From the IMG/VR virus record IMGVR_UViG_3300043410_001471, positions 62,001 through 126,000 of that record: 64,000 nt of DNA. The stretch is one strand, 5' to 3'. This document shows, piece after piece, positions 28,377-49,365 of this stretch. Below the pieces are notes generated by a model, which worked only from the letters and a program-made list of their open reading frames with translations, was not told where the DNA came from and searched no databases. The translations under genes and the position numbers were made by a program. How positions within the stretch are numbered: the stretch's first letter is position 1; each line of letters starts with the position of its first letter.

Positions 28377-28387
28377 AAATAAAGTTA

Positions 28388-29262: not shown

Positions 29263-29278
29263 TAAAAATAATAGAGTT

Positions 29279-29491
29279 ATGGCTACATCAAAAAAACAAG
29301 AAGAAACGCAAGAAACATCCGAATTATTACTATTAGAAGCTAAGAAAGTTAAAGCATTGGAAAAAATTGCAAACTCTTTAGATGCACTTACTGTTTGGTT
29401 TGAAGAAATCGATAAAGAAGAGTGGGGAGAGAGATTGCAATGGTATTTAGCAGAATTTCATAAGAAGATAGTGGAGGAGGATGCAAACTAA
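29279..29491 (+). CDS. Small helical hypothetical protein (70 aa)
   Basis: Directly downstream of the promoter; overlaps the next start. Confidence 0.65.
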   Translation: MATSKKQEETQETSELLLLEAKKVKALEKIANSLDALTVWFEEIDKEEWGERLQWYLAEFHKKIVEEDAN

Positions 29492-34437: not shown

Positions 34438-35403
34438 ATGAAAATATTAGTTACAGGAGGAGCAGGTTATTTAGGCTCTGTTATAGTTGATAAAATGTTA
34501 AACGCCGGTTATGAAGTTGTTGTATTGGATAAGTTATTATTTAATCAAACTTCATTATTACAATATACATCCAATCCAAAGTTCAAATTTATTTATGGAG
34601 ATGTTCGTAATGTAACAGAATTGGAAAGATTATGTAATGAATCGGATGTGATTATTCCATTAGCTGCAATTGTAGGATTTCCTGCATGTGCGGCAGACCC
34701 AAAGTTAGCAAAAGAAATTAACTTTGACCAAATTGTCAATATAGTAAGATTTGGTAAAGGTAAAAAGATTTTATATCCTAATACAAATAGTGGGTATGGA
34801 ATTGGTGAGGGACAAACGGAATGTACCGAAGATTCACCATTAACCCCTATTTCGGTATATGGGCAAACCAAATGTGATGCTGAAAACTTTTTAAGAACGA
34901 TGACTGATGCTATTACATTCAGATTGGCAACTGTATTTGGAGTATCACCGAGAATGAGAACGGATTTATTAGTAAACGATTTTACTTATAAAGCAATTAC
35001 GGATAAATACATAGTAGTATTTGAAAAGAATTTTAAAAGAAACTTTATTCATGTCGAAGATGTGGCATCCGCATTTCTTTTTATGTTACAAAATTACGAT
35101 ACATACAAAGGTGAAGTATTCAATGTAGGATTGAGTTCGGCAAACCTTTCAAAGCAAGAATTATTAGAAAAGATTCAATCGCATGTAAAGGATTTTGCGG
35201 TATCATACAACGACTTTTATGAGGACCCTGATAAAAGAGATTACATTGTATCAAACGCTAAAATAGAAGCGACTGGATGGATGCCAGAGTGGGATTTGGA
35301 TAGAGGTATTAAACAACTTATGATGGGATACCAAATGGTAGTTCCAAAAATGGGTTCTGAATTTAGAAACGGATTTCCTTTAGGTTACGCACAAAACTTT
35401 TAA
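34438..35403 (+). CDS. NAD-dependent sugar epimerase/dehydratase (extended SDR)
   Basis: TGGAGYLG; YGQTK catalytic YxxxK; RLATVFG, RNFIHVED. Confidence 0.92.
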   Translation: MKILVTGGAGYLGSVIVDKMLNAGYEVVVLDKLLFNQTSLLQYTSNPKFKFIYGDVRNVTELERLCNESDVIIPLAAIVGFPACAADPKLAKEINFDQIVNIVRFGKGKKILYPNTNSGYGIGEGQTECTEDSPLTPISVYGQTKCDAENFLRTMTDAITFRLATVFGVSPRMRTDLLVNDFTYKAITDKYIVVFEKNFKRNFIHVEDVASAFLFMLQNYDTYKGEVFNVGLSSANLSKQELLEKIQSHVKDFAVSYNDFYEDPDKRDYIVSNAKIEATGWMPEWDLDRGIKQLMMGYQMVVPKMGSEFRNGFPLGYAQNF

Positions 35404-35404
35404 T

Positions 35405-35950
35405 ATGAGTAATAAGTGGGATGAATTTATAGAAACACCATCTAAGAAATTTGGATATCAAGTTCCATCATTTCAACCATCAGTATTCAGAGAATATAGA
35501 GGTGAAATATTTACAACTTTCCATTCGGAAGAACATCCGGTAATGAGACACATTCATTATGATAAAAGTGAGATATCAATTCACGGAAGATTTTCTCGTT
35601 CATACAAAGGAGTATTGAGAGGATTACATTGGGATAAAAAAACATGGAAGTTAGTTCAAGCAGTAGTAGGTGATATCTACTTAGTTGTATTGGATATGAG
35701 AGAAACTTCACCAACTTATGGAGATTGGGAATCGTACATCATATCCGAAAGATTAAGAAATCAAGTACTGATTCCACCGGGATTTGCAAATGGACATTAT
35801 GCATTAACTGATTGTATGTTTCACTATAACCTATTTTACAAAGATGGTTATGTAGATGCAGATGAGCAAGGTGTAGTTAAATGGAATGACCCGGAGTTTC
35901 AAATGGAATGGCCAACCGATAAACCTATATTACAAAAAAGAGATAGATAA
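35405..35950 (+). CDS. rmlC: dTDP-4-dehydrorhamnose 3,5-epimerase family (cupin)
   Basis: FREYRGEI, SYKGVLRGLH, GDIYLVVLDMR..SPTYG.W, IPPGFANG, WNDP...EWP. Confidence 0.92.
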   Translation: MSNKWDEFIETPSKKFGYQVPSFQPSVFREYRGEIFTTFHSEEHPVMRHIHYDKSEISIHGRFSRSYKGVLRGLHWDKKTWKLVQAVVGDIYLVVLDMRETSPTYGDWESYIISERLRNQVLIPPGFANGHYALTDCMFHYNLFYKDGYVDADEQGVVKWNDPEFQMEWPTDKPILQKRDR

Positions 35951-36783
35951 TGCCTACACTTTGGACATTTGGTGATTCGTTTACAGCGGGGCATGGTATG
36001 AATGGTGAGATACCAGAATATGAACATGCTGACAAGAATTACAAATGGACAAAATTATTATCAAATGAGTTACAATATGACTTAAAAGATTTCAGCCAAA
36101 ACGGAATTCCTAATGAAAGAATATTATTTAAACTTTTAGAAAATTTAGAAAATTTTGAGAAAGATGATATTGTAATTATACAAAGTAGTACAATAACGAG
36201 ATATGAATTTCCATTTTATGAAAAAAAGAAAAAATTAAAAGAACCCACCGATGGTTATATGTATTTTTTAAACGAAATGGATTCAATAACATATGATATG
36301 GTAAAAGATGATTATGAAACTTATGATGGGAACATAATAAGTGAAATGGAATATAAAGCCAGTAAAGATTTCATGCAATATATCGTACCATCCACATATT
36401 ATTATAGAAGAAATATAGTAAATCTTTCAAATATAGCAAAATATTTATACAATAAAAAATTAATAAAAAATGTTATATTTTGGAATTTGGAATCAATTAG
36501 AACCGATTCCATACCAAATAAACAGCCATTAGTATTTAATATATTTGATGATTATTCCGATATGTATGATTATTCTTTGTACGATATGAGTTATACTGGA
36601 ATCGATACATTTGATTATGGCTGGTTAAATATATTTCGTAAACTTAAATTGACAATATGGGATGATAGTCAGAAATCTATATATGATTTTCATTTATCAA
36701 AAAAAGGACATATATGGTTTACAAATGTTATTTTAGATAAATTAAATATTTCTAAACGAATTAAACCATTGAGTATATTATGA
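35950..36783 (+). CDS. SGNH/GDSL-like protein (paralog 1 of 5)
   Basis: WTFGDSFT block I, NG..N..I, C-terminal DFHLSKKGH. Confidence 0.65.
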   Translation: MPTLWTFGDSFTAGHGMNGEIPEYEHADKNYKWTKLLSNELQYDLKDFSQNGIPNERILFKLLENLENFEKDDIVIIQSSTITRYEFPFYEKKKKLKEPTDGYMYFLNEMDSITYDMVKDDYETYDGNIISEMEYKASKDFMQYIVPSTYYYRRNIVNLSNIAKYLYNKKLIKNVIFWNLESIRTDSIPNKQPLVFNIFDDYSDMYDYSLYDMSYTGIDTFDYGWLNIFRKLKLTIWDDSQKSIYDFHLSKKGHIWFTNVILDKLNISKRIKPLSIL

Positions 36784-37535
36784 AATACGATTTAATAGTA
36801 GGATTCGGATGTAGTTTTACAGAAGGAGGTGGTTTGGATAATCCAAATGTTTATAAGTTTATCAATAATATTGAAGATAGCACTATTGGATTTTTACACC
36901 CCGATATAATACAATTTAAATATGATAATAATTTTATATCGTATTTATCTGAATTGTATAAATGTGATTATATAAATTTTGGAGAATCGATGTCATCAAA
37001 TGATTTAATATTTCAAAAAATATATGATTATTTTAAAGAAAAAATTATAAACAAACGAATTCTATGTATTGGACAAGTCACAATGTTTACAAGACAAAAT
37101 GTTTATTATGATTTTACTAAGGAAACTTTAAAATTAAATAGAGTAGAATTTAGTGACCCACCATTTAATAATGATGATAAATACAAACCACTATATCAGT
37201 ATTATGAAAATTACTTATCATTTATTTATAATGAAGATGTAGTAGTTTCTAATTTAGAAAAAAATATTGAATTATATGATAATTGGTTAAGATATAAAGG
37301 CGTAGATACATTGTGGTTATCATATGATGGTAATCCAAATCAATTCATAGAATCGGATAAATTTATTAAATTTGATGGTGATAATTTGGGAGCATGGGCT
37401 GAAAAAAATAAATTGAGAATTATGGATATACCCAATTGCCCGGTGCCAGACCCACATCTGAATTTAGAAGGTCATATGGAAGTTGCAAAATTAATTTATC
37501 AAAAAGTAAAAAATAGAAAAACAAAAGTTATATGA
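36780..37535 (+). CDS. SGNH-like protein (paralog 2 of 5)
   Basis: GFGCSFTEG, SSNDLI, DPHLNLEGH. Confidence 0.65.
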   Translation: MKYDLIVGFGCSFTEGGGLDNPNVYKFINNIEDSTIGFLHPDIIQFKYDNNFISYLSELYKCDYINFGESMSSNDLIFQKIYDYFKEKIINKRILCIGQVTMFTRQNVYYDFTKETLKLNRVEFSDPPFNNDDKYKPLYQYYENYLSFIYNEDVVVSNLEKNIELYDNWLRYKGVDTLWLSYDGNPNQFIESDKFIKFDGDNLGAWAEKNKLRIMDIPNCPVPDPHLNLEGHMEVAKLIYQKVKNRKTKVI

Positions 37536-38167
37536 TACGAAATTTAGAAAACTACAATAAGGTAGAAAATGTGCATGAATCCTTTACACCACAAGATTTA
37601 ATTGATTTTGAAAATCTAATAGTAAAACATTGGGAAGATGCAAAAATCAGAGGACCTATACATTTATCGAATGGAAATGAAGAACAATTAATTGAAATAT
37701 TTAAAAGAATTTCAAAAAATGATTGGGTATTTAGTACATGGCGTTCTCATTATCATGCATTATTAAAAGGGGTATGTCCTGTTTGGATTGAAGAAGAAAT
37801 TCTAAAAGGTAAATCTATTACATTATGTAATTTAGATGAAAAATTTTATTCATCTGCTATTGTGGGAGGTACTCTATCAATTGCATTAGGAGTTGCAATG
37901 GGAATTAAAGCAAAAGGTAGTGATGAAAAGGTTTGGTGTTTTATTGGAGATATGTCTTTTGAAAGTGGTATATTCTACGAAGTTCATAAATATGCAAGAA
38001 ATTTTGATTTACCATTATATTTTGTAGTAGAAGATAATGGTGTTTCTACATATACACCAACCGCAGTAACTTGGAATACTAAAAGAGATATCCCATCGGA
38101 TGTTATACATTATAAGTATGATTCAAAATTTCCACATTACGGAACTGGTAAATGGATAGCATTTTAA
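37532..38167 (+). CDS. TPP-dependent enzyme, E1-alpha-like subunit (shortened)
   Basis: STWRSHYH, SAIVGG, GDMSFESG...VVEDNG (GDG-x-N TPP motif). Confidence 0.88.
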   Translation: MIRNLENYNKVENVHESFTPQDLIDFENLIVKHWEDAKIRGPIHLSNGNEEQLIEIFKRISKNDWVFSTWRSHYHALLKGVCPVWIEEEILKGKSITLCNLDEKFYSSAIVGGTLSIALGVAMGIKAKGSDEKVWCFIGDMSFESGIFYEVHKYARNFDLPLYFVVEDNGVSTYTPTAVTWNTKRDIPSDVIHYKYDSKFPHYGTGKWIAF

Positions 38168-38168
38168 T

Positions 38169-39389
38169 ATGTTGTATAACAATAATTTGCACGGATTTGA
38201 TAAGTTTATTTCAGAATGGGACTTAAATACTGAATATGTTTTATTTGGTGCCAGTAAAGAGTGCGTACAATTTATTCGTAGTATGGATATTTTAATGGGA
38301 GAAGGTGTATTGAAAATAAAATACATAGTTGACCATTCTATAAAAGATAACGATACATTAGATAACATAAAAGAAATAAGTTCAGCATATCACGAATCAA
38401 AAGTAATTCAATCAAATAGAAATAATTTAAAGTTGGTTAATATGGATGAATATGATTTCAATCAAAACCAACAAATTATTATTACAACGGATGTATTTAA
38501 AAACAAATACAAAAAGTTGTTAGATGAAAAAAATATAAAATGGACTTGGTATAAACATATTGCTTCAATCTGGCCTTTTAAACATAAAAACAAAACTCAC
38601 ATATTTCAAACAGATGTGTTGGTTACTGAAAAATGTACATTGAATTGTTCACATTGTAATATGTTCATGCCACATTTTGAACAACCAATTCATAGAGAAG
38701 TTGATACAATAAAAAACGATATTGATTCATTTTTTAACAAAGTGGATTATGTTAGTATATTTCATTTAGTTGGTGGTGAACCAGTTTTATATCCAAATAT
38801 TGAAGATGTAGTTAGATATGTTATTACAAATTATATACACAAAATTGATAAATTAATAATTACAACCAACGGAACAATTTTACCAAAAGATAGTATGCTT
38901 AATTTATTAAAAGTAAATGATGTTATTTTGAGTGTAAGTGATTATACCGATAAGTTAGAAAATATAAAAAAGAAAGTTGTAAAGGTATTAGAAAAATATA
39001 AACAATTTGGAATCAATCATTATGTAAGAAATGAAATTGAATGGTATGATTTTGGTGATTTAAGAATAAAAGGTGGTAGAACAACGGAACAATTAATAAA
39101 TCATTTTGATAGTTGTACTGCACCATTTAGAGGATTAAATGATGGCAAATTTTATTATTGTCATTTAAACACATCGGCAGTTAGAACAAATTTATTTCCA
39201 TTAAATGAAAATGATTATGTTGATATAAACTCTATTTCGAAGGAAGAATTATTGAAGTTTGATTTGGGATATACCGATTTAGGATATATTACATTTTGTG
39301 ATAATTGTAACGGATGTAATACTGGAATTAAAATATCAGTTAGTTATGAAAAACAGGGTGTTAGAGATTTAAATTACGATGTACTATGA
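38169..39389 (+). CDS. Radical SAM protein with N-terminal Rossmann-like domain
   Basis: EKCTLNCSHC, LVGGEP, ITTNG; N-terminal LFGAS...IVD; C-terminal C...FYYCH...CDNCNGC cluster. Confidence 0.85.
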   Translation: MLYNNNLHGFDKFISEWDLNTEYVLFGASKECVQFIRSMDILMGEGVLKIKYIVDHSIKDNDTLDNIKEISSAYHESKVIQSNRNNLKLVNMDEYDFNQNQQIIITTDVFKNKYKKLLDEKNIKWTWYKHIASIWPFKHKNKTHIFQTDVLVTEKCTLNCSHCNMFMPHFEQPIHREVDTIKNDIDSFFNKVDYVSIFHLVGGEPVLYPNIEDVVRYVITNYIHKIDKLIITTNGTILPKDSMLNLLKVNDVILSVSDYTDKLENIKKKVVKVLEKYKQFGINHYVRNEIEWYDFGDLRIKGGRTTEQLINHFDSCTAPFRGLNDGKFYYCHLNTSAVRTNLFPLNENDYVDINSISKEELLKFDLGYTDLGYITFCDNCNGCNTGIKISVSYEKQGVRDLNYDVL

Positions 39390-39826
39390 AAGTAATAATT
39401 GATATAGATAATACATTATGTAATAGTAATGTAAGATTTGCTTTAGCAACAAAACCAAATGGAAAAATAGATTGGGAAGTAGCACATATTCCTAATAATA
39501 TTTTGATGGATGACCCATTTTATCCTATGATTGATTTAGCAAAAAGATATAAGAAAGATGGATTTGAGGTTATACTACTTACAGGTCGACCGGAATCGGT
39601 TAGAGGAGTTACAATTGAGTGGTTAAAAAAATATGATATAGAATATGACCAATTAATTATGAGAAGTTGGGAAGATAACTTTTTAAAGGCACCAATTTAT
39701 AAAAAGAAAATGTATGAAACTTATATCAAAGAAGGAGTATTTTGTGCATATGATGATGACCAACGAATAATTGATATGTGGGTTGAATTGGGAATACCTT
39801 GTTTTAAAGTTTATGTTATTGATTAA
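39386..39826 (+). CDS. HAD-superfamily phosphatase (PNKP/PseT-like)
   Basis: IIDIDNTL motif I, LLTGRP motif II, K, AYDDD motif IV. Confidence 0.88.
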   Translation: MKVIIDIDNTLCNSNVRFALATKPNGKIDWEVAHIPNNILMDDPFYPMIDLAKRYKKDGFEVILLTGRPESVRGVTIEWLKKYDIEYDQLIMRSWEDNFLKAPIYKKKMYETYIKEGVFCAYDDDQRIIDMWVELGIPCFKVYVID

Positions 39827-40769: not shown

Positions 40770-40784
40770 TTATATAAAAGATAT

Positions 40785-42107: not shown

Positions 42108-43095
42108 CGGAAAAAAAGTTTTAGTTACTGGAGCAAATGGATTAGTAGGATTACCAGCAGTTAAGAAATGTTTAGAAGAGGGTGCTGAAAAAGTATATGC
42201 GGTAGACCTTAAATTTGGTGATAATCTTAAATTATTACAATCACAATATAGTGATAAAATAGTTTTAGTACAAAGTGATTTAACATATCTTTCCCATTGT
42301 GAAAATTTATTCACATTGGATAAAATTGATATTGTACTACACATTGCAGGAGTCAAAGGTTCACCGGCTCGTTCATCTACACAACCTGCGGATTATCTAT
42401 TCCCAATGTTGATGTTCAATACCAATATGATTAAAGCATCATTTGATGCGAAGGTTGATTGGTTTGTATATCTTTCATCGGTTGGAGTTTATAAACCAGC
42501 AGATGTAATGAACGAAGAAGATATTTGGTCACAAGAAGAAACTTGGGCATCAACTCCATCTCGTTTAGATTGGCATCCAGGTTGGACAAAAAGAATGGGA
42601 GAACTTACTTTGGATTCATTACGAGTTCAATATGGTTGGGATAATTGGACTGTAATTAGACCTTCTAACATATATGGAACAAACGATAATTTTGCGCAAG
42701 ATGCAACGGTAATCTCTTCTAACATTTGGAAGTTATTCAATGTAGAGGGGGATGATATGATATGTTGGGGCGATGGTTCATCCAAAAGAGATTTTGTATT
42801 TGGTGATGATGTGGCACAAGCATCAATTGATGTAGTTAAAAAAGAAGTTAGAGATATTATCAACTTTGGATGTGCAGAAGCAGTATCAATCAAAGATACA
42901 ATTGAAACTATTGTTGAATGTTATACTGAAATTACGGGTAAAACTAAAAACATAGTTTGGGATTCTACAAAAACAAACGGAGACCCTATTAGATGTTTAG
43001 GTTCTAAAAAACAAAAACAATATGGTATTTTACCACAAACTACATTAAAAGAAGGATTAACAAAATCAATTTTAGAATATAAAAGTAGATTATAA
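42097..43095 (+). CDS. GDP-fucose-synthase-like extended SDR lacking the canonical catalytic Tyr
   Basis: TGANGLVG, LSSVGVY, RPSNIYG.NDNF, WGDGSSKRDF; PGWTK stands where YxxxK is expected. Confidence 0.85.
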   Translation: MEFNGKKVLVTGANGLVGLPAVKKCLEEGAEKVYAVDLKFGDNLKLLQSQYSDKIVLVQSDLTYLSHCENLFTLDKIDIVLHIAGVKGSPARSSTQPADYLFPMLMFNTNMIKASFDAKVDWFVYLSSVGVYKPADVMNEEDIWSQEETWASTPSRLDWHPGWTKRMGELTLDSLRVQYGWDNWTVIRPSNIYGTNDNFAQDATVISSNIWKLFNVEGDDMICWGDGSSKRDFVFGDDVAQASIDVVKKEVRDIINFGCAEAVSIKDTIETIVECYTEITGKTKNIVWDSTKTNGDPIRCLGSKKQKQYGILPQTTLKEGLTKSILEYKSRL

Positions 43096-44111
43096 TGAAA
43101 CATTTAGTAGCAGCTGGTTGTTCGTTTTCATCGTTGGTAAAGCCAAATGTGGATATGCCAACCGAATACGATATACTTAAAAAAGATAAAACTACATGGA
43201 CTTGGATTGAATGGATACAATATTACGAAGGAGATTCTTATCAAATTCACAATTATGGATGCCCTACAAACGATAATGATACCATTGTAGAGAGTGTATT
43301 GTATGGTATTAATAAACTTATAAAGCAAGGAGTAGATAAATCCGATATAGAGGTGATAATTCAATGGTCTGCTGTGAGTAGAAATTCATTTTTTATACCA
43401 AAAGGAATGGTTGATAGAGCAAAACTGAATGTAACTACTCATACAAACGATTTTATTTCAGAAAAACGATATAAATACGAACATGGGTTCAAATATTTAA
43501 CGGGTGGGTATAATAGAACAAATAATTTAGATGAATTAAATGATATCGTATTTAATTATTTGGGGTTAGAATACTCAAATGAAGAAAGAATAATAAGTTT
43601 TCTAAAAAATATAATTTTTATATCAAGTTTTTGTAAATCAACTGGTATAAAGTATAAATTCTTTACTATGGGTAATAACTTTTCATCAAATATATTTACA
43701 AAATACGAAGATATAAATAAAACACTTAAAAGTCAGCAAGAACCACATATGGATATCAGACCTGATATTTTAGAGAAAAGACTTGTCGGAGAAAATTGGA
43801 ATGCATCTACATTAATCGATATCCCATATATTAATTACTTATTTGAATTAATTGATTTAAATGATTTTTGGTTTTATGAAATAGAAAATTATCATAAATT
43901 TGGAGGTGCAATTGAGTGGTCTGTTGGCGAATGGGGAAGTGGTGTTAAAGATGATTCTGGACTTGGATTAAGCGAATTGGTATATTTTGAAATGGAAGGA
44001 TTATCTGATGAAGAAAAAGCTGATTATTTTAAACATCGTTCTTATGGACATCCATCATCTTTAATGTGGAGGAAGTTTTATTTTGAAGTATTAAAACCAA
44101 ATTTTCTATGA
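43095..44111 (+). CDS. SGNH-like protein (paralog 3 of 5)
   Basis: AAGCSFS, TNDNDTI, IIQWS, GHPS; close paralog of the next gene. Confidence 0.6.
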   Translation: MKHLVAAGCSFSSLVKPNVDMPTEYDILKKDKTTWTWIEWIQYYEGDSYQIHNYGCPTNDNDTIVESVLYGINKLIKQGVDKSDIEVIIQWSAVSRNSFFIPKGMVDRAKLNVTTHTNDFISEKRYKYEHGFKYLTGGYNRTNNLDELNDIVFNYLGLEYSNEERIISFLKNIIFISSFCKSTGIKYKFFTMGNNFSSNIFTKYEDINKTLKSQQEPHMDIRPDILEKRLVGENWNASTLIDIPYINYLFELIDLNDFWFYEIENYHKFGGAIEWSVGEWGSGVKDDSGLGLSELVYFEMEGLSDEEKADYFKHRSYGHPSSLMWRKFYFEVLKPNFL

Positions 44112-45193
44112 AATATATAATTACAAATGGTTGTTCTTTTACTAGAGCTGGTAGAATAAACATTGATGTAACCGATGATAATTTTATAAAGGAAGATGAT
44201 ATGTCTAATAATGGGGATTCATCGGAATTTAACTATTATCCGCATTGGATACAATTATTAAACCCTGAATTGAAAGTTATAAATTTGGGTAATGTTACTA
44301 ATGATAATCAAGTTATCGCTAGAAACATAATATACAAAATTGAAAAAATGAAAAAGGATGGAATCGAACCATCCGATATATCAGTTGTAGTACAATGGTC
44401 ATCTTTTTATAGAAATGCATATTTTGTATCACCATCCAAACAATTAGAAAATACAAAATTAAAATTACCACAACATCGTAAAAGATGGGATGATGATTAT
44501 GCACACATTAATGATTTTGTAGAAGAAAAGAATGAGGTGGGTGAATACGGATACTATTTCTTATCAGGGGGATTTGGGATGGACCATGTAAAAAATCCAA
44601 TGAAAGAATTCGCATATTTAAATTTAGGACATCTACATTCATATGAAGAAAGATTACTTATATTTTTGGAAGCAATAGTGATGTTACAAATGTATTTTAA
44701 ATCAAATGGTATAAAATATAAAATGTTTAATATAGCTAATAATTTTTCAGATGAATATGTTTTGAATTGTGTGAATGGTGGTGGATTTCCAATGTTTAAA
44801 CCTGATAATTCTAAAAACAATGAAATGTATGAAGTTATCAAAAACAAATACATACCAAACACTTGGAATTCTCAAATGCTATATTTTAAAAATCCACATT
44901 TATCCTATTATTATGATATGATTGACTGGAGTGGATTTTGGTTCTATGAAGAAGAAAATTTACATAAATTTGGTGGTGTAATTGAGTGGGGGATACGAAA
45001 TTTTGATATAAATTATAGAGATGGTATAAATGCAAACATATTATTTATGGAACAATATAGAAGAGATGTTATTCATACGGAAGAAAGTTTGATTGATATT
45101 TATCAAGACGGTCATTGTCCATTGGGGCACATATCATCTGCATTATATAGAAAATTTGTAAAAGAAATCGTATCAACATGGAATCTTTATTAA
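44108..45193 (+). CDS. SGNH-like protein (paralog 4 of 5)
   Basis: TNGCSFT, TNDNQVI, VVQWS, GHIS; shares FWFYE.EN.HKFGG.IEW with 43095. Confidence 0.6.
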   Translation: MKYIITNGCSFTRAGRINIDVTDDNFIKEDDMSNNGDSSEFNYYPHWIQLLNPELKVINLGNVTNDNQVIARNIIYKIEKMKKDGIEPSDISVVVQWSSFYRNAYFVSPSKQLENTKLKLPQHRKRWDDDYAHINDFVEEKNEVGEYGYYFLSGGFGMDHVKNPMKEFAYLNLGHLHSYEERLLIFLEAIVMLQMYFKSNGIKYKMFNIANNFSDEYVLNCVNGGGFPMFKPDNSKNNEMYEVIKNKYIPNTWNSQMLYFKNPHLSYYYDMIDWSGFWFYEEENLHKFGGVIEWGIRNFDINYRDGINANILFMEQYRRDVIHTEESLIDIYQDGHCPLGHISSALYRKFVKEIVSTWNLY

Positions 45194-45843
45194 AAAAAGA
45201 ATTATTTGAAAACGGATATGTATCATTTCATTTAAAAGATTTAGATGAAACTATTTATGAAAATCTTAAAAGTATATTTCCAATTGGTAATTTAAAGCCG
45301 GAAATGTTTAAAAACCTCAAACATGCTATACCAATGGATGTTGGATATGAATACGATAACAAATCATTGATGGATGTTTCATTCCAAAAACTTAATACTA
45401 TAAAGAGGAATATTTTAGATAAATTGGAAGAACATAATAATCAGTTGTGGTTTTATGGTTGGTTATATGAAGTCAATACTGAAAATAATCCATTTGATAA
45501 ACTTATAAAACCAATATTTAATAAATTTTACGATACAACGATAACAACAGCTAATTCACAAGTTACAATGTATAATGATGGGTGTTATCTTAGAAATCAT
45601 CGTGATGGTAATTATGAGTTTGATGGTGGTACTAGAAATTGTGTAATATTGATTTATCTATCTACCGATTATGAAAACGGAAAAGGTGGAGAGTTGGTAC
45701 TATCATCCGATAATGATAATGAATTAGTAGTAGAACCCATATATGGTAATGTTGCTGTAATGGATTTTACAAAACATGATGCCTGGCATAGAGTTGAAAA
45801 GGTTATAGATTACAATCGATATTGTTTTATAAATTTTTGCTAA
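45178..45843 (+). CDS. 2OG-Fe(II) oxygenase (prolyl-4-hydroxylase-like)
   Basis: TMYNDGCYL..HRDG (HxD), ILIYL, GGEL, WHRV, R. Confidence 0.85.
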   Translation: MESLLKKELFENGYVSFHLKDLDETIYENLKSIFPIGNLKPEMFKNLKHAIPMDVGYEYDNKSLMDVSFQKLNTIKRNILDKLEEHNNQLWFYGWLYEVNTENNPFDKLIKPIFNKFYDTTITTANSQVTMYNDGCYLRNHRDGNYEFDGGTRNCVILIYLSTDYENGKGGELVLSSDNDNELVVEPIYGNVAVMDFTKHDAWHRVEKVIDYNRYCFINFC

Positions 45844-45844
45844 T

Positions 45845-46462
45845 ATGAATGAATCGCATAAAATTCAATTATTTAAAGAAGGTTATACTACATTTAATTT
45901 ATACGAATTAAATGATTCAGAAATCAATCAATCTTTAAATGAATTGCAAACATTATCTAAAAAAGAATTTAAAAATTTAAGATATAAAACCATAAATAAT
46001 ACAAATGATGGTGTCTTTATAAAAGATTCTTTTGAAAATTTGGAAGAAATAAAAAATTCTATAAAAAAAACCAATCTTTACGAAATGTGGTATTATAACG
46101 ATGTAATACCAAAAAACAAATATAATAAGCAATTATTGAATAAAATAAAGCAATTTTTTTATAATGAAGATGTGAATGATTTTAATCATGCAACATATAT
46201 TACAATGTATAATGATGGGTGTGTTTTAATAGAGCATAATGATGGGTTTAATCCTAATTCAAAATATAAATGCGTAATACTAATTTATTTAAATGATGAA
46301 TCGGAAATTCAAACCGGTGGAGAATTGATATTAGATGGTAATATATTGATTAAACCTGTTATAGGAAATGTTGCTATAATGGATTTTACAAAGAATGATA
46401 TCAAACATGGTGTAAAAGAAGTTAGTGGATATCATAGAAAATGTTATCTAAATTTTTGTTAA
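45845..46462 (+). CDS. 2OG-Fe(II) oxygenase paralog
   Basis: TMYNDGC.L.EHNDG, ILIYLN, GGEL, HGV, RKC. Confidence 0.85.
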   Translation: MNESHKIQLFKEGYTTFNLYELNDSEINQSLNELQTLSKKEFKNLRYKTINNTNDGVFIKDSFENLEEIKNSIKKTNLYEMWYYNDVIPKNKYNKQLLNKIKQFFYNEDVNDFNHATYITMYNDGCVLIEHNDGFNPNSKYKCVILIYLNDESEIQTGGELILDGNILIKPVIGNVAIMDFTKNDIKHGVKEVSGYHRKCYLNFC

Positions 46463-46486
46463 TATCAAAAAAAATTAGTATCTTTA
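46455..46486 (+). promoter_or_regulatory. Bacteroidota-type promoter
   Basis: TTTG (46455-58), 20-nt spacer, TATCTTTA (46479-86), 16 nt before ATG 46503. Confidence 0.7.
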
Positions 46487-46502
46487 TAAATTAATATAAC
46501 AT

Positions 46503-48110
46503 ATGCAACAACCATTTAAAATATACACATTAGAATCAAATGACCAAAAGGTTTTAAAGAAAGTTTTGGAATCGTCTGTTAATATCGAAAATATACGAGC
46601 TTCATCAGAAGGAGTTGGTAATAGAAGTTATGAACTTCCAACCGATATGGTGAAAACATTGGAAAATTGTGAATTAGAAAAAACCAATATCATATCAAAT
46701 GATTCTAAATTAAGTCAAATTTGGTATACATTAAATAAGCCTGAAAATAAGATAGAAGTTGAAAAAATGTTAGAAAAGCATTTTAAACAATTATATCCCA
46801 ATATAACTTATCCTTTGGAAATTTTATGGAATGTTACAATGTATACAGAGGGGTGTTTTATTGAAGAACATATAGATGGTAGAGATGCCGATAGAATGGC
46901 TGGATTTTTATTTTATTTAAATGAAAGTTATGATAGTGATAATGGTGGTCTATTAAGAGTTATAGACCCAAATACAAATGAAATAACAAATATTGTTCCG
47001 GAATTCGGACAAGCAATATGTATAGATTATATAAACAATGAGGTATCACACGAAGTGACACCTGTTAAACAAGGAAAAAGATTAGCAATTTGCGCATTCA
47101 TTCATAAAAGAAATCATATGGGAAAAAGTTACAAAATTTTAGTTACTGGAGCAAGTGGATTTATAGGTTCACAATTGGTTAAAAGTTTAAAAGAAAGAGG
47201 ATATTGGAATTTACGAACAACTTCATTTAGTAGAGACTTACCAAATACAATCAAAGATAAGGAATCAATTGAACATTTTAAAGGAGATTTACAAGATGCA
47301 AACTTTTGTAAGGAAGTTTCCGAAGGTGTAGATGTAGTATTTCATTGTGCAGCAAATACATCAAACGCATTAGATACAAAACAAAATCCTTTATTACATG
47401 TTACTCCAAATGTAGAAATGAATGTAAATTTGATGGAACAAAGTTGGAGAAATGGAGTTAAGAAGTTTATGTTTATTTCATCTAATACTGTATACCCAGA
47501 TATGAAGGACGCATTTTGTACCGAAGATATAAATATCCATGCAACTCCTACATTTCCAATATATGGGGCGGTTGGTAATATGAAAAGATATGGTGAATTA
47601 CTTTGTGAATATTTTTCAAAACAAATCCATAATCCAATGCAATGTGTAATTATTAGACCATCAAATGCATTTGGACCAAATGATAAATTTGATTTCGAAA
47701 AGTGTCATGTTACACCTGCAAACATTCGTAAAGTTGCAGATGGTTTAAATCCAATTCCGGTATGGGGTGATGGTAGTGAGGTAAGAGATTTACTTCATGT
47801 TGAAGATATGGCGGATGGTATGATATTTTTAGCAGAAATGGTAGATAAATATTCTATTTACAATGTTTGTTATGGAGAAGGATTTAGTGTAAATGAAGTA
47901 TTAGGATGGATTAAAGAAGCTGATAATAATGATAATCCTGTCGAATATGTAAATAATAAAGCTCCAATGATTCCTGTTAGATTAATGTCATCTAAAAAAA
48001 TAAATGAGTTGGGGTGGAAACCAAAAAGAGATTTAAAGCAAGCTCTTAAAGAAACATTGGAATGGTATAAAGAACATAAACACTTATATAATCCAAACTC
48101 AAAACCATAA
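46503..48110 (+). CDS. In-frame fusion of a 2OG-Fe(II) oxygenase and a GDP-fucose-synthase-like SDR
   Basis: N-half EHIDG, FLFYLN, GGLL, HEV, R; C-half (from Met at 47118) TGASGFIG, FISSNTVY, VGNMK in place of YxxxK, RPSNAFG, WGDGSEVRD. Confidence 0.85.
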   Translation: MQQPFKIYTLESNDQKVLKKVLESSVNIENIRASSEGVGNRSYELPTDMVKTLENCELEKTNIISNDSKLSQIWYTLNKPENKIEVEKMLEKHFKQLYPNITYPLEILWNVTMYTEGCFIEEHIDGRDADRMAGFLFYLNESYDSDNGGLLRVIDPNTNEITNIVPEFGQAICIDYINNEVSHEVTPVKQGKRLAICAFIHKRNHMGKSYKILVTGASGFIGSQLVKSLKERGYWNLRTTSFSRDLPNTIKDKESIEHFKGDLQDANFCKEVSEGVDVVFHCAANTSNALDTKQNPLLHVTPNVEMNVNLMEQSWRNGVKKFMFISSNTVYPDMKDAFCTEDINIHATPTFPIYGAVGNMKRYGELLCEYFSKQIHNPMQCVIIRPSNAFGPNDKFDFEKCHVTPANIRKVADGLNPIPVWGDGSEVRDLLHVEDMADGMIFLAEMVDKYSIYNVCYGEGFSVNEVLGWIKEADNNDNPVEYVNNKAPMIPVRLMSSKKINELGWKPKRDLKQALKETLEWYKEHKHLYNPNSKP

Positions 48111-48829
48111 TGGATAGTATATTATTTTCAGGTTGTTCTTACACATATGGAGAGGGATTGTGGAGAGAAACAGGTGATACACATCAAAATTCTGAAAATC
48201 AAAAATATCTTTTAGAAAATAGATGGACAACAAAAGTTTCAAATCATTTTAATCTCAATCAAATTTCAAAAGGGTACAATGGTGGAAGTAACATTGGTTC
48301 TATTAAATTTGTAAGAGAAGAATTTGATGCAACTACTTGGAATGGGAATGATATTAAATTGATATTATTTCAAACTACGCAATTCAATAGACACAAATTT
48401 AGTATAGATGAACAAATATCCGAATTAGAAAAATTTGTAAAAGAATTTGAAAATAAAAATATACCTGTAAGATTTATACATTGGCAATGGGTTGATATAA
48501 CGGATGAAGAGATGGAAATATTCTTAAATAGAAAGCATGATTTTTTAGGAAAATTAAATCCATCATTTTTTCCAGATAAAACAATTCCACCATATGATGG
48601 TAATAAATTAACTTCTAAAATAATAAGAGATAGAACAATCAGAATTTTAGATAAATTTAATTTTCACGAAATGGTGTATCATAACGATGCACATAAAAAA
48701 GGAACATTATCTAACAAATATACATTGGCTGGAAAATTAAGATGTGAAGATTTCCATATGAATCAAGAAGGGCATGATATTTTAACAAATGAAATAATTA
48801 ATTATATAGAAAAAAATAAGTTATTATGA
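48110..48829 (+). CDS. SGNH-like protein (paralog 5 of 5)
   Basis: FSGCSYTYG, GGSNIGS, DFHMNQEGH. Confidence 0.65.
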   Translation: MDSILFSGCSYTYGEGLWRETGDTHQNSENQKYLLENRWTTKVSNHFNLNQISKGYNGGSNIGSIKFVREEFDATTWNGNDIKLILFQTTQFNRHKFSIDEQISELEKFVKEFENKNIPVRFIHWQWVDITDEEMEIFLNRKHDFLGKLNPSFFPDKTIPPYDGNKLTSKIIRDRTIRILDKFNFHEMVYHNDAHKKGTLSNKYTLAGKLRCEDFHMNQEGHDILTNEIINYIEKNKLL

Positions 48830-49365
48830 ATACACCTCAATATTCTCCTTACAAAGATGCACTAACAAATGCTATGACTGAATTAGCAAAATTAGATGAT
48901 AGTATCTTTATTGGACAACAAATAGTTTATGCTGGAAATCCTATGTCTACAACATTAGGAGAAGTTCCAAAAGAAAAAATGATTGAAGTTCCTGTTATGG
49001 AAGAAACTCAAATGGGAATGAGTTTAGGATTGGCAATGACTGGTAAACGAGTAATAACATTTTATCCTCGTTGGGATTTTATTATTTCAGCAACCAATCA
49101 ATTAGTAAATCATTTGGATAAGTTTGAAATAATGACTGGTAAAAAGCCAAATGTAATAATTCGTTTAGGTAAAGGTTCTGATAAACCATTAGACCCTGGT
49201 CATCAACATAAAGGAAATTATTTTGAAGAGTTTAAATCTTTATGCAAGAACATAGAATTTCACGATTTAAAAACTCCTTCGGATATCGAATCGGCATATA
49301 AATATGCTACAAAAGAAGGTGGTGTGCATTTATTAGTAGAATACCCCGAATTATATTATAGTTAA
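48826..49365 (+). CDS. TPP-dependent enzyme, E1-beta/transketolase pyrimidine-binding subunit (no C-terminal domain)
   Basis: FIGQ...IE.PV.EETQMG...GLAM.G, NQLVNHLDK, GHQH; only 179 aa. Confidence 0.85.
   Translation: MNTPQYSPYKDALTNAMTELAKLDDSIFIGQQIVYAGNPMSTTLGEVPKEKMIEVPVMEETQMGMSLGLAMTGKRVITFYPRWDFIISATNQLVNHLDKFEIMTGKKPNVIIRLGKGSDKPLDPGHQHKGNYFEEFKSLCKNIEFHDLKTPSDIESAYKYATKEGGVHLLVEYPELYYS

What the first reader, a model, noticed from the sequence alone, without database searches (positions are those of the whole stretch)
34438..49365. Dispersed module for a probable branched-chain or unusual nucleotide sugar (TPP alpha/beta, RmlC, three SDRs)
Seen: a minimal E1-alpha-like gene (37532, 211 aa) and an E1-beta-like gene lacking its C-domain (48826, 179 aa) lie 11 kb apart. 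No E2 or E3 genes are present, so this is not a pyruvate dehydrogenase complex. RmlC and three SDRs are interleaved. Established: TPP carboligases such as YerE add a pyruvate-derived C2 unit to NDP-4-keto sugars (yersiniose), followed by reduction. Inference: a phage route to a C-branched or higher-carbon sugar.
Basis: inference. Interest (0 to 1): 0.65.

Follow-up and report, generated by a model that had tools for sequence, protein, structure and literature searches.

The report
Split mini thiamine enzyme, phage heptose pathway
A 245-kb uncultured phage carries the two halves of a stripped-down thiamine enzyme 11 kb apart, inside a gene set for modifying a seven-carbon nucleotide sugar. In bacteria the same two halves lie side by side in heptose-sugar clusters, so the enzyme most likely adds a two-carbon branch to an activated heptose, though this is unproven.

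Summary
Window 37532-38167 encodes a 211-aa E1-alpha-like ThDP/Mg-binding (PP) domain. Window 48826-49365 encodes a 179-aa E1-beta-like Pyr domain with no C-terminal domain. The whole 245-kb phage genome has no E2, lipoyl, E3 or Transketolase_C match.

The pair belongs to a distinct, widespread minimal family:
- The two genes are adjacent in 26 of 28 bacterial and archaeal loci.
- They are fused in cyanophages S-SM2 and P-TIM68.
- Their catalytic motifs are intact.
- They are predicted to bind each other (0.82, against a best control of 0.00).

Their neighbours are nucleotide-heptose genes, not central metabolism. These are GmhA/HddA/GmhB/HddC-like genes, a C4-dehydrogenase about 50% identical to window SDR 34438, ColD-type 3-dehydratases and B12 radical-SAM enzymes. 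The window's "RmlC" is closest to GDP-4-keto-heptose epimerases. SDR 34438 matches PDB 6VO6 at 5e-105. An HddA-like kinase lies about 110 kb away, outside the window.

Best reading (about 0.5): a minimal E1-type carboligase adds a pyruvate-derived C2 unit to a GDP-4-keto-heptose. It is refined to heptose chemistry, and the branching step remains inference.

The parts
37532..38167 (+). Minimal E1-alpha-like subunit (211 aa). It is the ThDP diphosphate/Mg-binding PP domain, with the motif GDM-x27-EDN.
   Evidence: It matches Pfam E1_dh at 9e-14 and NCBIfam PDH E1 alpha at 3e-23. The motif is visible in the translation. N169 and G139 are invariant and D140 nearly so across 35 relatives. The word search found 4,812 relatives with E <= 0.001; the 120 listed are 80-88% identical.
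48826..49365 (+). Minimal E1-beta-like subunit (179 aa). It is the Pyr domain only, with catalytic Glu59.
   Evidence: It matches Transket_pyr at 1.3e-7 and PDH E1 beta in NCBIfam and the PDB. E59 is invariant in 26 of 26 family members. The predicted complex with alpha scores 0.82 against a best control of 0.00.
34438..35403 (+). [quoted passage not shown] It is the presumed maker of the 4-keto acceptor.
   Evidence: It matches PDB 6VO6/6VO8 at 4.9e-105 over residues 2-302. Homologues 46-52% identical occur within about 7 kb of alpha/beta in 18 bacterial loci, and it is present in 61 of 71 related viral loci. That 6VO6 is Cj1427 is from my memory.
35405..35950 (+). RmlC-fold epimerase, closest to GDP-D-glycero-4-keto-D-lyxo-heptose 3,5- and 3-epimerases.
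   Evidence: It matches PDB 8DCO, 7M14, 8DB5 and 8DCL at 1e-35 to 1e-33, against about 1e-23 for dTDP RmlC. It is present in 74 of 75 related viral loci, usually directly upstream of alpha.
40785..42107 (+). GT-B-fold glycosyltransferase (440 aa). It belongs to a multi-copy paralogous family that usually lies directly downstream of alpha.
   Evidence: No Pfam match. The AlphaFold model has pLDDT 88. Foldseek hits are OtsA, GT4, TarM and LmbT at probability 0.99-1.0 but low TM scores of 0.3-0.4. It is present in 66 of 76 viral loci, often in 2-3 copies.
42097..43095 (+). GDP-fucose-synthase-like SDR. It is a candidate ketoreductase, acting either on C4 or on the side-chain carbonyl.
   Evidence: It matches PDB GDP-fucose synthases at 3e-19 and 7ANH at 1e-12. 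It is present in 70 of 75 viral loci.
46503..48110 (+). Fusion of a 2OG-Fe(II) oxygenase (residues about 110-201) with a GDP-mannose-3,5-epimerase/GFS-like SDR (residues about 210-530).
   Evidence: Pfam and PDB. It is present in 70 of 73 viral loci.
32302..33702 (+). Radical SAM protein (466 aa), a frequent member of the phage block.
   Evidence: It matches Pfam Radical_SAM at 1.2e-6. It is present in 56 of 69 viral loci. It has a weak hit to the profile of the bacterial B12-rSAM partner.
38169..39826 (+). Lineage-specific insert directly after alpha: a radical SAM protein (406 aa, 38169-39389) and a HAD phosphatase (146 aa, 39386-39826).
   Evidence: Pfam and NCBIfam. These genes occur in only 19 of 80 related loci. 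Their synteny is kept in L004-L006.
35950..37535 (+). Two SGNH/GDSL/DUF6071-like proteins inserted between the epimerase and alpha.
   Evidence: 35950-36783 has a weak GDSL match. 36780-37535 resembles DUF6071-like viral clusters in the ESM Atlas at 0.97. They occur in 6 and 19 related loci respectively.
43095..46462 (+). Variable fill between the SDRs: two proteins of unknown function (338 aa, and 361 aa with a weak DUF6071 match) and two 2OG-Fe(II) oxygenases.
   Evidence: Pfam. Presence in relatives is variable.
48110..48829 (+). SGNH/GDSL-like protein whose stop overlaps the start of beta.
   Evidence: ESM Atlas match to GDSL-bearing viral clusters at 0.96-0.97, with TM 0.64-0.71. PHROG 4180 at 5e-5.
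49365..51426 (+). A class I methyltransferase (209 aa) and a second GT-B family paralogue (479 aa).
   Evidence: Pfam MTS at 1.9e-8. The 479-aa protein aligns with the 440-aa family (23% identity in A3) and hits that family's copies in viral loci.
27612..32299 (+). Upstream glycan genes: a methyltransferase, a GT2-like protein, and two GT7 (beta-4-galactosyltransferase-like) enzymes, one of them with a ConA-like lectin domain.
   Evidence: Pfam. The same order is kept in L004 and L005.

Best explanation
The two genes encode the halves of one minimal heteromeric thiamine-diphosphate enzyme. Alpha is the PP domain and beta is the Pyr domain. It is an E1-type protein stripped of everything that ties E1 to a dehydrogenase complex. 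It works inside a pathway that remodels an activated heptose.

Proposed sequence (inferred except where noted):
1. [quoted passage not shown]
2. The Cj1427-like SDR (34438) oxidises it at C4.
3. The RmlC-fold enzyme (35405) epimerises it.
4. The alpha/beta enzyme decarboxylates pyruvate to hydroxyethyl-ThDP and adds this C2 unit to the C4 carbonyl. This gives a 4-C-acetyl tertiary alcohol, a branched C9 sugar.
5. The GFS-like SDRs and the 2OG oxygenase-SDR fusion tailor the product.
6. The GT-B and other glycosyltransferases transfer it to a phage or host surface target.

What is shown: domain identity, intact catalytic motifs, and the adjacency, fusion and co-occurrence patterns. The alpha/beta contact and the heptose assignment of the neighbours rest on prediction and homology. 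What is inferred: the donor, the acceptor, the C-C bond formation and the glycan's target.
For: (1) Identity and competence. Alpha has the GDM...EDN ThDP/Mg motif, and beta has an invariant Glu59.

(2) The two proteins are partners.
- They are adjacent in 26 of 28 prokaryotic loci.
- They are fused in S-SM2 SSM2_198, P-TIM68 gp190 and metagenomic proteins of about 400 aa.
- The complex model scores 0.82 against a best control of 0.00. That mark was reached by 51 of 78 solved complexes and 2 of 108 mismatched pairs. The runs agree in 100% of contacts and the partner pLDDT is 90.

(3) There is no E2, lipoyl, E3 or Transketolase_C match in the genome.

(4) Neighbourhood in bacteria:
- Cj1427-like SDR in 18 loci at 46-52% identity.
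- HddA-like kinase in 18 loci.
- HddC-like nucleotidyltransferase, with or without a fused GmhB-like phosphatase, in 14 loci.
- B12 radical-SAM in 11 loci.
- A DegT-family protein in 10 loci. All 10 carry SFY(Y/A)AH(H) or SFFFSHH, with His in place of the Schiff-base Lys (9 of 10 as a His-His pair). That is the ColD/RfbH 3-dehydratase signature. In 6 of the 10 it lies directly beside alpha/beta.
- A 4-keto-forming enzyme, a 3-dehydratase and a ThDP enzyme together make up the yersiniose logic (PMC9306805).

(5) Pathway bookkeeping. In L018, L020, L021, L024 and L029 the only SDR within 7 kb is the C4-dehydrogenase homologue. No ketoreductase is left to resolve the 4-keto group.

(6) In 80 related viral loci the conserved core is Cj1427-like SDR, epimerase, alpha, GT-B, SDR, 2OG/SDR fusion, beta.

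(7) Precedent. E1 alpha/beta-type (alphaKADH2) enzymes add pyruvate-derived C2 branches to NDP-keto sugars at C3 or C4. Examples are Plm8/Plm9, avilamycin, aldgamycin and KbDH-alpha/beta (PMC4802897, PMC12247030, PMC10338323).
Against: - No assay exists for any member of this mini family.
- I know of no described 4-C-branched heptose.
- The C. jejuni pathway runs with the same dehydrogenase, epimerase and reductase trio and needs no ThDP enzyme (PMC10680097). The phage has such a trio, so alpha/beta are not needed to close a plain epimer pathway.
- The phage lacks the ColD-type dehydratase, which supplies the strongest bacterial argument.
- Cyanophage homologues sit beside a Zn-alcohol dehydrogenase and sugar-phosphate-type genes, and have no Cj1427-like or RmlC-like gene.
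- One relative is fused to an APH-type kinase. That would suit a role at the sugar-phosphate level.
- Known sugar-branching E1 pairs are described as highly similar to PDH E1 subunits, whereas these are truncated.
- That 6VO6 is Cj1427 is from my memory; I could not confirm it in the paper library.
Confidence: 0.5

Rival explanations
1. Precursor-forming role. The mini enzyme acts at the sugar-phosphate level like a transketolase or DXS. It joins a C2 unit (from hydroxypyruvate, a ketose phosphate or pyruvate) to an aldose phosphate. The resulting ketose phosphate is a heptulose or octulose phosphate, which feeds the GmhA/HddA/GmhB/HddC-like activation route. From my memory, this would parallel the transaldolase LmbR at the start of the lincosamide octose pathway.
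For: - The module co-occurs with HddA-like kinase (18 loci), nucleotidyltransferase with or without GmhB-like phosphatase (14 loci) and SIS isomerase (6 loci).
- All of these score well below the NCBIfam equivalog cut-offs, as if they act on a related but different sugar.
- In the Pelagibacteraceae loci the order is SIS, alpha, beta, kinase.
- P0227 is an APH-kinase-alpha fusion.
- Cyanophage homologues lie among genes annotated as carbohydrate kinase, phosphoheptose isomerase and Zn-ADH.
Against: - Both halves resemble 2-oxo-acid E1 rather than transketolase.
- A pyruvate-derived product would be a 1-deoxy-ketose, which an aldose-ketose isomerase and an anomeric kinase cannot use.
- SDR 34438 and the epimerase are close to enzymes that act on the ordinary GDP-manno-heptose, and sedoheptulose 7-phosphate is a central metabolite.
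- SIS is present in only 6 of 28 loci and is absent from the phage genome.
- The closest physical linkage is to the 4-keto-forming SDR and the 3-dehydratase.
Confidence: 0.17
2. Plain decarboxylase or acyl supplier. The enzyme decarboxylates a 2-oxo acid to an aldehyde, or makes an acyloin, that is used for a non-carbohydrate decoration of the glycan. It forms no C-C bond with the sugar. One variant is a link to the 2-oxoglutarate that the Cj1427-type dehydrogenase consumes.
For: - The sequence is E1-like and there is no E2.
- The cluster is rich in decorating enzymes: SGNH-like proteins, methyltransferases and 2OG oxygenases.
- Cj1427-type enzymes need 2-oxoglutarate as co-substrate (PMC10680097).
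Against: - The conserved neighbours offer no obvious use for a free aldehyde.
- The tight and phylogenetically wide linkage is to 4-keto-sugar-forming enzymes.
- C. jejuni runs Cj1427 without such an enzyme (PMC10680097).
Confidence: 0.12
3. Hydroxyacetyl (glycolyl) rather than acetyl branching. The acceptor is the same, but the enzyme acts like the transketolases proposed for miharamycin and amipurimycin. It transfers a C2 ketol unit from hydroxypyruvate or a ketose.
For: - Transketolase-type branching of keto sugars has been proposed (PMC12247030).
- Some bacterial loci (L012, L038, L017) carry a second, split-transketolase-like pair in the same cluster, so both chemistries may occur in these glycans.
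Against: - The sequence affinity is to E1, not to transketolase.
- alphaKADH2 enzymes are reported to be restricted to pyruvate and C2 acetyl branches (PMC12247030).
Confidence: 0.1
4. The separation of the two genes reflects decay. Alpha and beta would be remnants that no longer form an enzyme in this phage.
For: The genes are 10.7 kb apart. The proteins are short compared with canonical E1 subunits.
Against: - Both are full length relative to their own family, and the catalytic residues are intact.
- Alpha is 72-88% identical across 80 viral loci, and beta is present in 69 of them at a median 71% identity.
- The split arrangement is conserved across the clade.
- The complex prediction passes.
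Confidence: 0.03

Closest known systems
alphaKADH2-type (E1 alpha/beta) sugar-branching ThDP enzymes of actinomycete antibiotic clusters: Plm8/Plm9 (paulomycose), AviB1/AviB2 and EvdU5/EvdS3 (eurekanate), the aldgamycin pair, and KbDH-alpha/beta (kibdelomycin)
   Same: - Two chains homologous to PDH E1 alpha and beta, with no E2 or E3.
- Encoded among NDP-sugar genes that make a keto sugar.
- Pyruvate is the donor for a C2 branch at C3 or C4 (PMC4802897, PMC10338323, PMC12247030).
   Different: - Both chains here are truncated to the bare PP domain (211 aa) and Pyr domain (179 aa).
- The context is surface-glycan and heptose genes of phages, SAR11, CPR bacteria and others, not deoxyhexose genes of antibiotic clusters.
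- The genes are split by 6-11 kb in this phage clade.
- I could not compare sequences directly with the characterised pairs, because none was on hand.
YerE / ErwE / MygE (acetolactate-synthase-like ThDP enzymes of yersiniose, erwiniose and gastriose biosynthesis)
   Same: The pathway logic matches: an NDP-sugar 4-keto intermediate, PLP/PMP-dependent 3-deoxygenation, ThDP-dependent addition of an acyl anion equivalent at C4, then ketoreduction (PMC9306805).
   Different: These are not homologous at the family level. YerE is a single-chain enzyme of the decarboxylase superfamily, a flavoprotein by the title of the cited Chen et al. paper (PMC4802897). Here there are two separate E1-type chains, and none of the scanned window proteins matched Pfam TPP_enzyme_N. 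The acceptors there are CDP-3,6-dideoxy-4-keto-hexoses.
Campylobacter jejuni capsular heptose modification enzymes (Cj1427 C4-dehydrogenase, Cj1430 3,5-epimerase, Cj1428 C4-reductase, HS:5 C3-dehydratase; HddA/GmhB/HddC)
   Same: - Window SDR 34438, the RmlC-fold protein and the GFS-like SDR are homologues of this trio.
- The phage kinase matches the HddA model over its full length.
- The bacterial partner loci add a ColD-type dehydratase like that of serotype HS:5 (PMC10440746).
   Different: In the two C. jejuni heptose-pathway papers I read, no ThDP enzyme is part of the pathway (PMC10680097, PMC10440746). The phage genome lacks GmhA, HddC and the dehydratase.
Pyruvate / branched-chain 2-oxo-acid / acetoin dehydrogenase E1 alpha2beta2
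   Same: These are the best sequence matches for both chains. The ThDP motif and the catalytic Glu are conserved.
   Different: - Alpha stops at E1_dh profile position 170 of 300.
- Beta lacks the C-terminal domain, which by textbook knowledge binds E2.
- No E2, lipoyl domain or E3 exists in the genome.
Cyanophage 'transketolase central region-containing protein' (S-SM2 SSM2_198, P-TIM68 gp190; PHROG 34187, function unknown)
   Same: It belongs to the same mini family. Its alpha part is 43% identical and its beta part 31-37% identical to the window proteins, and it lies in a phage sugar-gene island.
   Different: There it is a single fused chain of about 380-400 aa beside a Zn-alcohol dehydrogenase. 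No Cj1427-like, RmlC-like or HddA-like gene lies nearby.

Membership tests
E1 alpha/beta-type (alphaKADH2) sugar-branching ThDP enzymes | Two chains: alpha with the ThDP/Mg motif (PP domain), and beta with the Pyr domain and the cofactor-activating Glu | tested here: met
E1 alpha/beta-type (alphaKADH2) sugar-branching ThDP enzymes | The two chains form one enzyme | tested here: met
   They are adjacent in 26 of 28 loci. Fusions exist. The complex model scores 0.82 against a best control of 0.00. This is a prediction only, not a measurement.
E1 alpha/beta-type (alphaKADH2) sugar-branching ThDP enzymes | Encoded with enzymes that make an NDP-keto sugar, and without E2/E3 | tested here: met
E1 alpha/beta-type (alphaKADH2) sugar-branching ThDP enzymes | Near full-length similarity to PDH E1 alpha and beta subunits | tested here: not met
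   Alpha covers E1_dh profile positions 8-170 of 300. Beta has no Transketolase_C domain. The lengths of the characterised pairs were not checked here.
E1 alpha/beta-type (alphaKADH2) sugar-branching ThDP enzymes | Pyruvate-dependent C-C bond formation on a keto sugar | not testable with these tools
   This needs an enzyme assay.
2-oxo-acid dehydrogenase complex E1 (PDH, BCKDH, acetoin DH) | A C-terminal domain on beta that docks E2, plus E2 with lipoyl domains and E3 | tested here: not met
Transketolase, including split transketolases | Transketolase_N-type PP domain, Pyr domain and Transketolase_C domain | tested here: not met
   Only marginal partial transketolase/DXS hits, at 1e-5 to 1e-6 over about 60 residues around the ThDP motif. 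There is no Transketolase_C in the genome.
YerE-like (decarboxylase superfamily) sugar-branching enzymes | A single chain with Pyr, middle and PP domains in that order | tested here: not met
   There are separate PP and Pyr chains of E1 type. None of the scanned window proteins matched TPP_enzyme_N or TPP_enzyme_M.
GDP-heptose modification pathway of the C. jejuni type | C4-dehydrogenase homologue (Cj1427 type) | tested here: met
   PDB 6VO6/6VO8 at 4.9e-105. The identity of the entry with Cj1427 is from my memory; the enzymology is from PMC10680097.
GDP-heptose modification pathway of the C. jejuni type | GDP-4-keto-heptose 3- or 3,5-epimerase homologue | tested here: met
   The heptose epimerases score about 1e-35, ahead of dTDP RmlC at about 1e-23.
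GDP-heptose modification pathway of the C. jejuni type | Own supply route for the sugar: GmhA, HddA, GmhB, HddC | tested here: inconclusive
   An HddA-like kinase is present at G000 209693-210745 (NF049969, 5e-100). There is no SIS and no NTP_transferase match. A HAD phosphatase and a small RfaE-II/TagD-like cytidylyltransferase-fold protein are present, but their specificity is unknown.

The most novel reading that the evidence does not exclude
A previously unrecognised minimal two-chain ThDP carboligase family builds C-branched heptoses, which are C9 sugars with a quaternary C4. These sugars would go into the surface glycans of abundant uncultured microbes (SAR11, CPR bacteria, Verrucomicrobia, Nitrospirales and others). 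A large clade of roughly 200-330-kb aquatic phages carries the same chemistry, with the two subunit genes kept permanently apart, to glycosylate its virion or re-dress its host.
Probability: 0.4. Interest if true: 0.75.

Novelty: new variant of a known kind. Interest (0 to 1): 0.6.

Why it matters
If the reading is right, it matters in four ways.
- It extends ThDP-dependent sugar branching from actinomycete antibiotics and a few LPS sugars to heptoses, to phages, and to some of the most abundant uncultured bacteria.
- It defines the smallest known E1-type catalytic unit, about 390 residues in two chains or one. That is attractive as a carboligase for making tertiary alcohols.
- It predicts a new class of branched C9 sugars in environmental glycans, which are likely phage-receptor or anti-receptor structures.
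- It is a clean case of an obligate heteromer whose genes stay separated by 6-11 kb, with a further pathway gene more than 100 kb away, throughout a phage clade. That warns against reading phage pathways only from contiguous operons.

Tried and rejected
- Megablast of the region against named phages found nothing. The nearest named phages by terminase are only 52-55% identical.
- The 35-sequence alignment was too diverse for the genome scan, so I used a 10-sequence one.
- The word-based protein search returned only near-identical phage proteins. I therefore spent the one exhaustive search on alpha to reach distant and fused relatives.
- Erwiniose- or caryophyllose-like sugars made from heptose plus radical-SAM methylation was a lead from my memory. 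I rejected it: erwiniose comes from CDP-3,6-dideoxy-4-keto-glucose and 4-hydroxy-2-oxopentanoate through ErwE (PMC9306805).
- A phosphonopyruvate/sulfopyruvate-decarboxylase-like role was rejected. The chains are E1 type, and no PEP mutase appears among the window ORFs or the neighbour clusters.
- The 1562-aa protein as the sugar nucleotidyltransferase is unlikely. Its N-terminus is weakly NMNAT-like.
- I searched the phage genome for SIS, NTP_transferase and DegT genes and found none.
- I tested whether the ORFs translationally coupled to alpha (36780) and to beta (48110) replace the missing E1 parts. They do not. Both look like SGNH/DUF6071-type proteins, and the bacterial pairs lack them.
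- The 179-aa ORF after alpha in L016 is not a beta homologue.
- I tried to confirm that PDB 6VO6 is Cj1427 and failed. The code is not in the paper library, and the structural paper is not held.
- No reads tools and no alternative genetic code were used.

Full report
**Setting.** The window is bases 62001-126000 of a 245,436-base IMG/VR virus record with direct terminal repeats. It is a T4-like myovirus. It carries a baseplate wedge, a tail fibre, a large terminase and a portal, and every gene in the window lies on the + strand. GC content is 31.7% genome-wide and 29.3% in the glycan region. The nearest named phages by terminase are Flavobacterium phage immuto (55% identity) and Microcystis phage Mel-JY01 (52%). 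Megablast against named phages finds nothing. Between the tail-fibre genes and the terminase, from about 27.6 kb to 51.4 kb, lies a block of some 25 sugar-related genes.

**The observation.**
- ORF 37532-38167 (211 aa) matches Pfam E1_dh at 9e-14, but only over profile positions 8-170 of 300. It also matches TPP_enzyme_C, and PDH E1 alpha in NCBIfam (3e-23) and in the PDB.
- Its translation shows the ThDP/Mg motif as GDM-x27-EDN. G139 and N169 are invariant, and D140 and E167 nearly so, in 35 relatives.
- ORF 48826-49365 (179 aa) matches Transket_pyr at 1.3e-7 over profile positions 5-156 of 174, and E1 beta in NCBIfam and the PDB. Pfam reported no C-terminal domain for it.
- The cofactor-activating Glu (E59) is invariant in 26 of 26 family members.
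- The two genes are 10,658 bases apart.
One SDR is fused to a 2OG-Fe(II) oxygenase domain.
- The whole genome has no match to 2-oxoacid_dh, Biotin_lipoyl, Pyr_redox_2 or Transketolase_C, while the control genomes ring for all four.

**Are the two proteins one enzyme?** Three independent lines say yes.
- First, a scan of one genome per prokaryotic species found the mini-alpha at 44-57% identity in about 30 loci. They come from Pelagibacteraceae single-cell genomes, Patescibacteria, Elusimicrobia, Verrucomicrobia, Nitrospirales, Omnitrophota, Actinomycetota, a Woesearchaeote, Massilia sp. LXY-6 and others. In 26 of the 28 loci analysed, a homologue of the window's beta (35-49% identity) is the immediately adjacent gene.
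- Second, cyanophages S-SM2 (SSM2_198) and P-TIM68 (gp190) encode one fused alpha-beta chain. It is annotated 'transketolase central region-containing protein' and falls in PHROG 34187, function unknown. The exhaustive search of 1.84 billion representatives found further fusions of about 400 aa (P0139, P0215) among 118 clusters at E < 1e-30.
- Third, a complex prediction scored 0.82 with a best control of 0.00. That mark was reached by 51 of 78 solved complexes and 2 of 108 mismatched pairs. The runs agree in 100% of contacts and the partner pLDDT is 90. Because E1 heterotetramers have been solved, this pass shows likeness rather than proof.

**What pathway do they belong to?** I clustered the neighbours of alpha/beta in the 28 loci and annotated the recurrent families. 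They are:
- an SDR 46-52% identical to window SDR 34438 (18 loci);
- a GHMP kinase best matched by the HddA model (18 loci);
- a nucleotidyltransferase best matched by HddC, often fused to a GmhB-like HAD phosphatase (14 loci);
- a B12-binding radical-SAM enzyme (11 loci);
- a DegT-family protein (10 loci);
- an RmlC-fold protein (8 loci);
- a GmhA-like SIS isomerase (6 loci);
- GT2 glycosyltransferases.

None of these is a central-metabolism gene. All ten DegT-family partners have His where aminotransferases have the Schiff-base Lys (SFYYAHH and variants). From established knowledge this is the signature of the ColD/RfbH sugar 3-dehydratases. Their best NCBIfam hit is RfbH. In 6 of the 10 loci they lie directly next to alpha/beta.

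**The window's own neighbours point the same way.**
- SDR 34438-35403 matches PDB 6VO6/6VO8 at 4.9e-105 over 301 residues. I recall these entries as C. jejuni Cj1427, but I could not confirm the code in the library.
- The 'RmlC' at 35405-35950 matches GDP-D-glycero-4-keto-D-lyxo-heptose 3,5- and 3-epimerases at about 1e-35, ahead of dTDP RmlC at about 1e-23.
- SDR 42097 is GDP-fucose-synthase-like, and one of its hits (7ANH, 1e-12) I recall as a C. jejuni C4-reductase entry. The SDR half of 46503 is like GDP-mannose 3,5-epimerase or GDP-fucose synthase.
- Profiles built from the bacterial partner families, searched against the whole phage genome, found an HddA-like kinase far outside the window at G000 209693-210745 (7.8e-67; NCBIfam HddA 5e-100 over its full length).
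- That kinase sits at the end of a second glycan cluster holding GT1, GT2, an SDR, a hexapeptide acyltransferase, a methyltransferase and a GDSL-like protein.
- The kinase is 85-89% identical, and equally distant from alpha, in two related complete phage genomes.
- The phage has no SIS, NTP_transferase or DegT gene. It does have a 145-aa RfaE-II/TagD-like cytidylyltransferase-fold protein at G000 216768-217205.

**How conserved is the split?** IMG/VR holds 405 contigs with relatives of alpha. In the 80 best loci (72-88% identity; contigs up to 333 kb) the recurrent core, in order, is:
- the Cj1427-like SDR (61 of 71 loci that reach that far);
- the epimerase (74 of 75), usually touching alpha;
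- alpha;
- a 440-aa protein (66 of 76), usually touching alpha on the other side;
- the GFS-like SDR (70 of 75);
- the 2OG/SDR fusion (70 of 73);
- beta (69 loci), starting a median 6.3 kb after alpha starts.

The 440-aa family is multi-copy. It has no Pfam match, but it folds with pLDDT 88 into a GT-B glycosyltransferase. Foldseek hits OtsA, GT4, TarM and LmbT at probability 0.99-1.0 with low TM scores. So alpha and beta are not adjacent in the typical locus of this phage clade. The 11-kb spacing in the window comes from lineage-specific insertions: two SGNH/DUF6071-like genes, a radical-SAM enzyme, a HAD phosphatase, several unknowns and two 2OG oxygenases. Close relatives keep exactly the window's gene order.

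**Mechanism.** The best-supported reading is that alpha/beta is a minimal E1-type carboligase. It would make hydroxyethyl-ThDP from pyruvate and add it to the C4 carbonyl of a GDP-4-keto-heptose. The arguments are these.
- The tightest and widest linkage is to the enzyme that makes the 4-keto group.
- In bacteria, the trio of 4-keto former, ColD-type 3-dehydratase and ThDP enzyme repeats the yersiniose scheme. In that scheme YerE adds pyruvate-derived C2 to CDP-3,6-dideoxy-4-keto-glucose (PMC9306805).
- In L018, L020, L021, L024 and L029 the C4-dehydrogenase homologue is the only SDR within 7 kb, so nothing else is on hand to consume the 4-keto group.
- Homologous precedent exists. E1 alpha/beta-type (alphaKADH2) enzymes attach pyruvate-derived C2 branches at C3 or C4 of NDP-keto sugars in paulomycin, avilamycin/everninomicin, aldgamycin and kibdelomycin biosynthesis. 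The review counts about 120 such clusters (PMC4802897, PMC10338323, PMC12247030).

Against this reading:
- The C. jejuni trio works without any ThDP enzyme (PMC10680097), and the phage has such a trio.
- The phage lacks the dehydratase.
- Cyanophage homologues have a different, sugar-phosphate-flavoured context beside a Zn-alcohol dehydrogenase.
- One relative is fused to an APH-type kinase.
- No member of the family has been assayed.

I put about 0.5 on C-branching of a GDP-4-keto-heptose with an acetyl unit. I put a further 0.1 on the glycolyl variant, 0.17 on a precursor-forming transketolase/DXS-like role, 0.12 on a plain decarboxylase or acyl supplier, and 0.03 on decay. That alpha/beta is a working ThDP heteromer dedicated to a heptose-type nucleotide-sugar pathway I hold at about 0.8.

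**Comparison with what is known.** It works most like the alphaKADH2 sugar-branching pairs, and by analogy like YerE. On membership:
- It meets the two-chain PP/Pyr architecture, the partnership, the lack of E2/E3 and the keto-sugar context.
- It does not meet near-full-length similarity to E1 subunits.
- The defining reaction is untested.
- It is not a dehydrogenase-complex E1, not a transketolase and not a YerE-type enzyme.

I therefore rate it a new variant of a known kind. It is a minimal form, in a new sugar context (heptose), in new hosts (phages and uncultured bacteria), with a conserved split gene arrangement. The paper library returned no description of this family.

**Limits.**
- The ORF calls in high-GC loci (L014, L023) were noisy, so the co-occurrence counts are lower bounds.
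- The target of the glycan (virion or host surface) and the host of the phage are unknown. Pelagibacteraceae single-cell contigs carry the module, but this does not identify the host.
The PDB sequence search (9 of 10) and the small genome searches (10 of 12) are nearly spent.

Noticed in passing
G000 196.5-210.7 kb (locus L087), outside the window: There is a second glycan cluster about 110 kb from alpha. It holds GT1-like proteins, an SDR, two GT2, a hexapeptide acyltransferase, a methyltransferase, a GDSL-like protein, a P-loop kinase, and at its end the HddA-like GHMP kinase. The kinase is 85-89% identical in two related complete phage genomes.
   Followed up: partly
P0131 and P0152 (metagenomic alpha homologues): Two alpha homologues are interrupted by or fused to intein or homing-endonuclease domains (LAGLIDADG_3; Intein_splicing/HINT). 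That is unusual for an accessory sugar gene.
   Followed up: no
P0227 (552 aa, metagenomic): It is a fusion of an APH-family phosphotransferase domain with the mini-alpha. This hints at a link to a sugar kinase step.
   Followed up: no
L012 6484-8219, L038 14602-16265, L017: Some bacterial clusters (Pelagibacteraceae, Parcubacteria) carry a second ThDP pair beside the mini pair. It consists of a longer alpha-like chain (253-310 aa) and a 298-301-aa chain that in L012 matches Transket_pyr and Transketolase_C; its L038 counterpart was grouped with it by sequence only. This is a split-transketolase-like enzyme.
   Followed up: partly
window 46503-48110: A 2OG-Fe(II) oxygenase domain is fused to a GDP-mannose-3,5-epimerase/GFS-like SDR. 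The fusion is conserved in 70 of 73 related viral loci. I know of no characterised fusion of this kind.
   Followed up: partly
window 29481-32299: There are two tandem 470-aa proteins with N-terminal GT7 (beta-1,4-galactosyltransferase-like) domains. One also has a ConA-like lectin domain. GT7 is mainly an animal family.
   Followed up: no
window 51569-56257: A 1562-aa protein has a recognisable domain only at its N-terminus. That domain has a cytidylyltransferase fold and is weakly NMNAT-like (Pfam 8e-5; PDB 2QJT 5e-4). The remaining 1,400 residues or so have no match.
   Followed up: partly
window 35950-37535, 44108-45193, 48110-48829: Four paralogous SGNH/GDSL/DUF6071-like proteins are scattered through the cluster. 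They may be sugar O-acyl transferases or esterases.
   Followed up: partly
window 38169-39389: A radical-SAM protein with a 140-aa N-terminal extension lies directly after alpha. Its weak best hits are PapB, MoaA and prokaryotic viperin, at about 1e-9 over the core only. It is lineage-specific, occurring in 19 of 80 loci.
   Followed up: no
window 16992-20150: A single 1052-aa ORF combines SbcD-like (residues 4-348) and SbcC-like (residues 303-1051) nuclease parts.
   Followed up: no
L090 (LR756501, 735-kb uncultured phage): A megaphage carries the pair in the order beta then alpha, about 1 kb apart, with an SDR 5 kb downstream.
   Followed up: partly
L007, L012, L018, L020, L021, L025, L030: Seven Pelagibacteraceae single-cell or MAG contigs carry the alpha/beta heptose module. 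In L021 it lies next to typical cellular genes (an EamA transporter and a GT4 initiating transferase), so the module is chromosomal in SAR11.
   Followed up: partly
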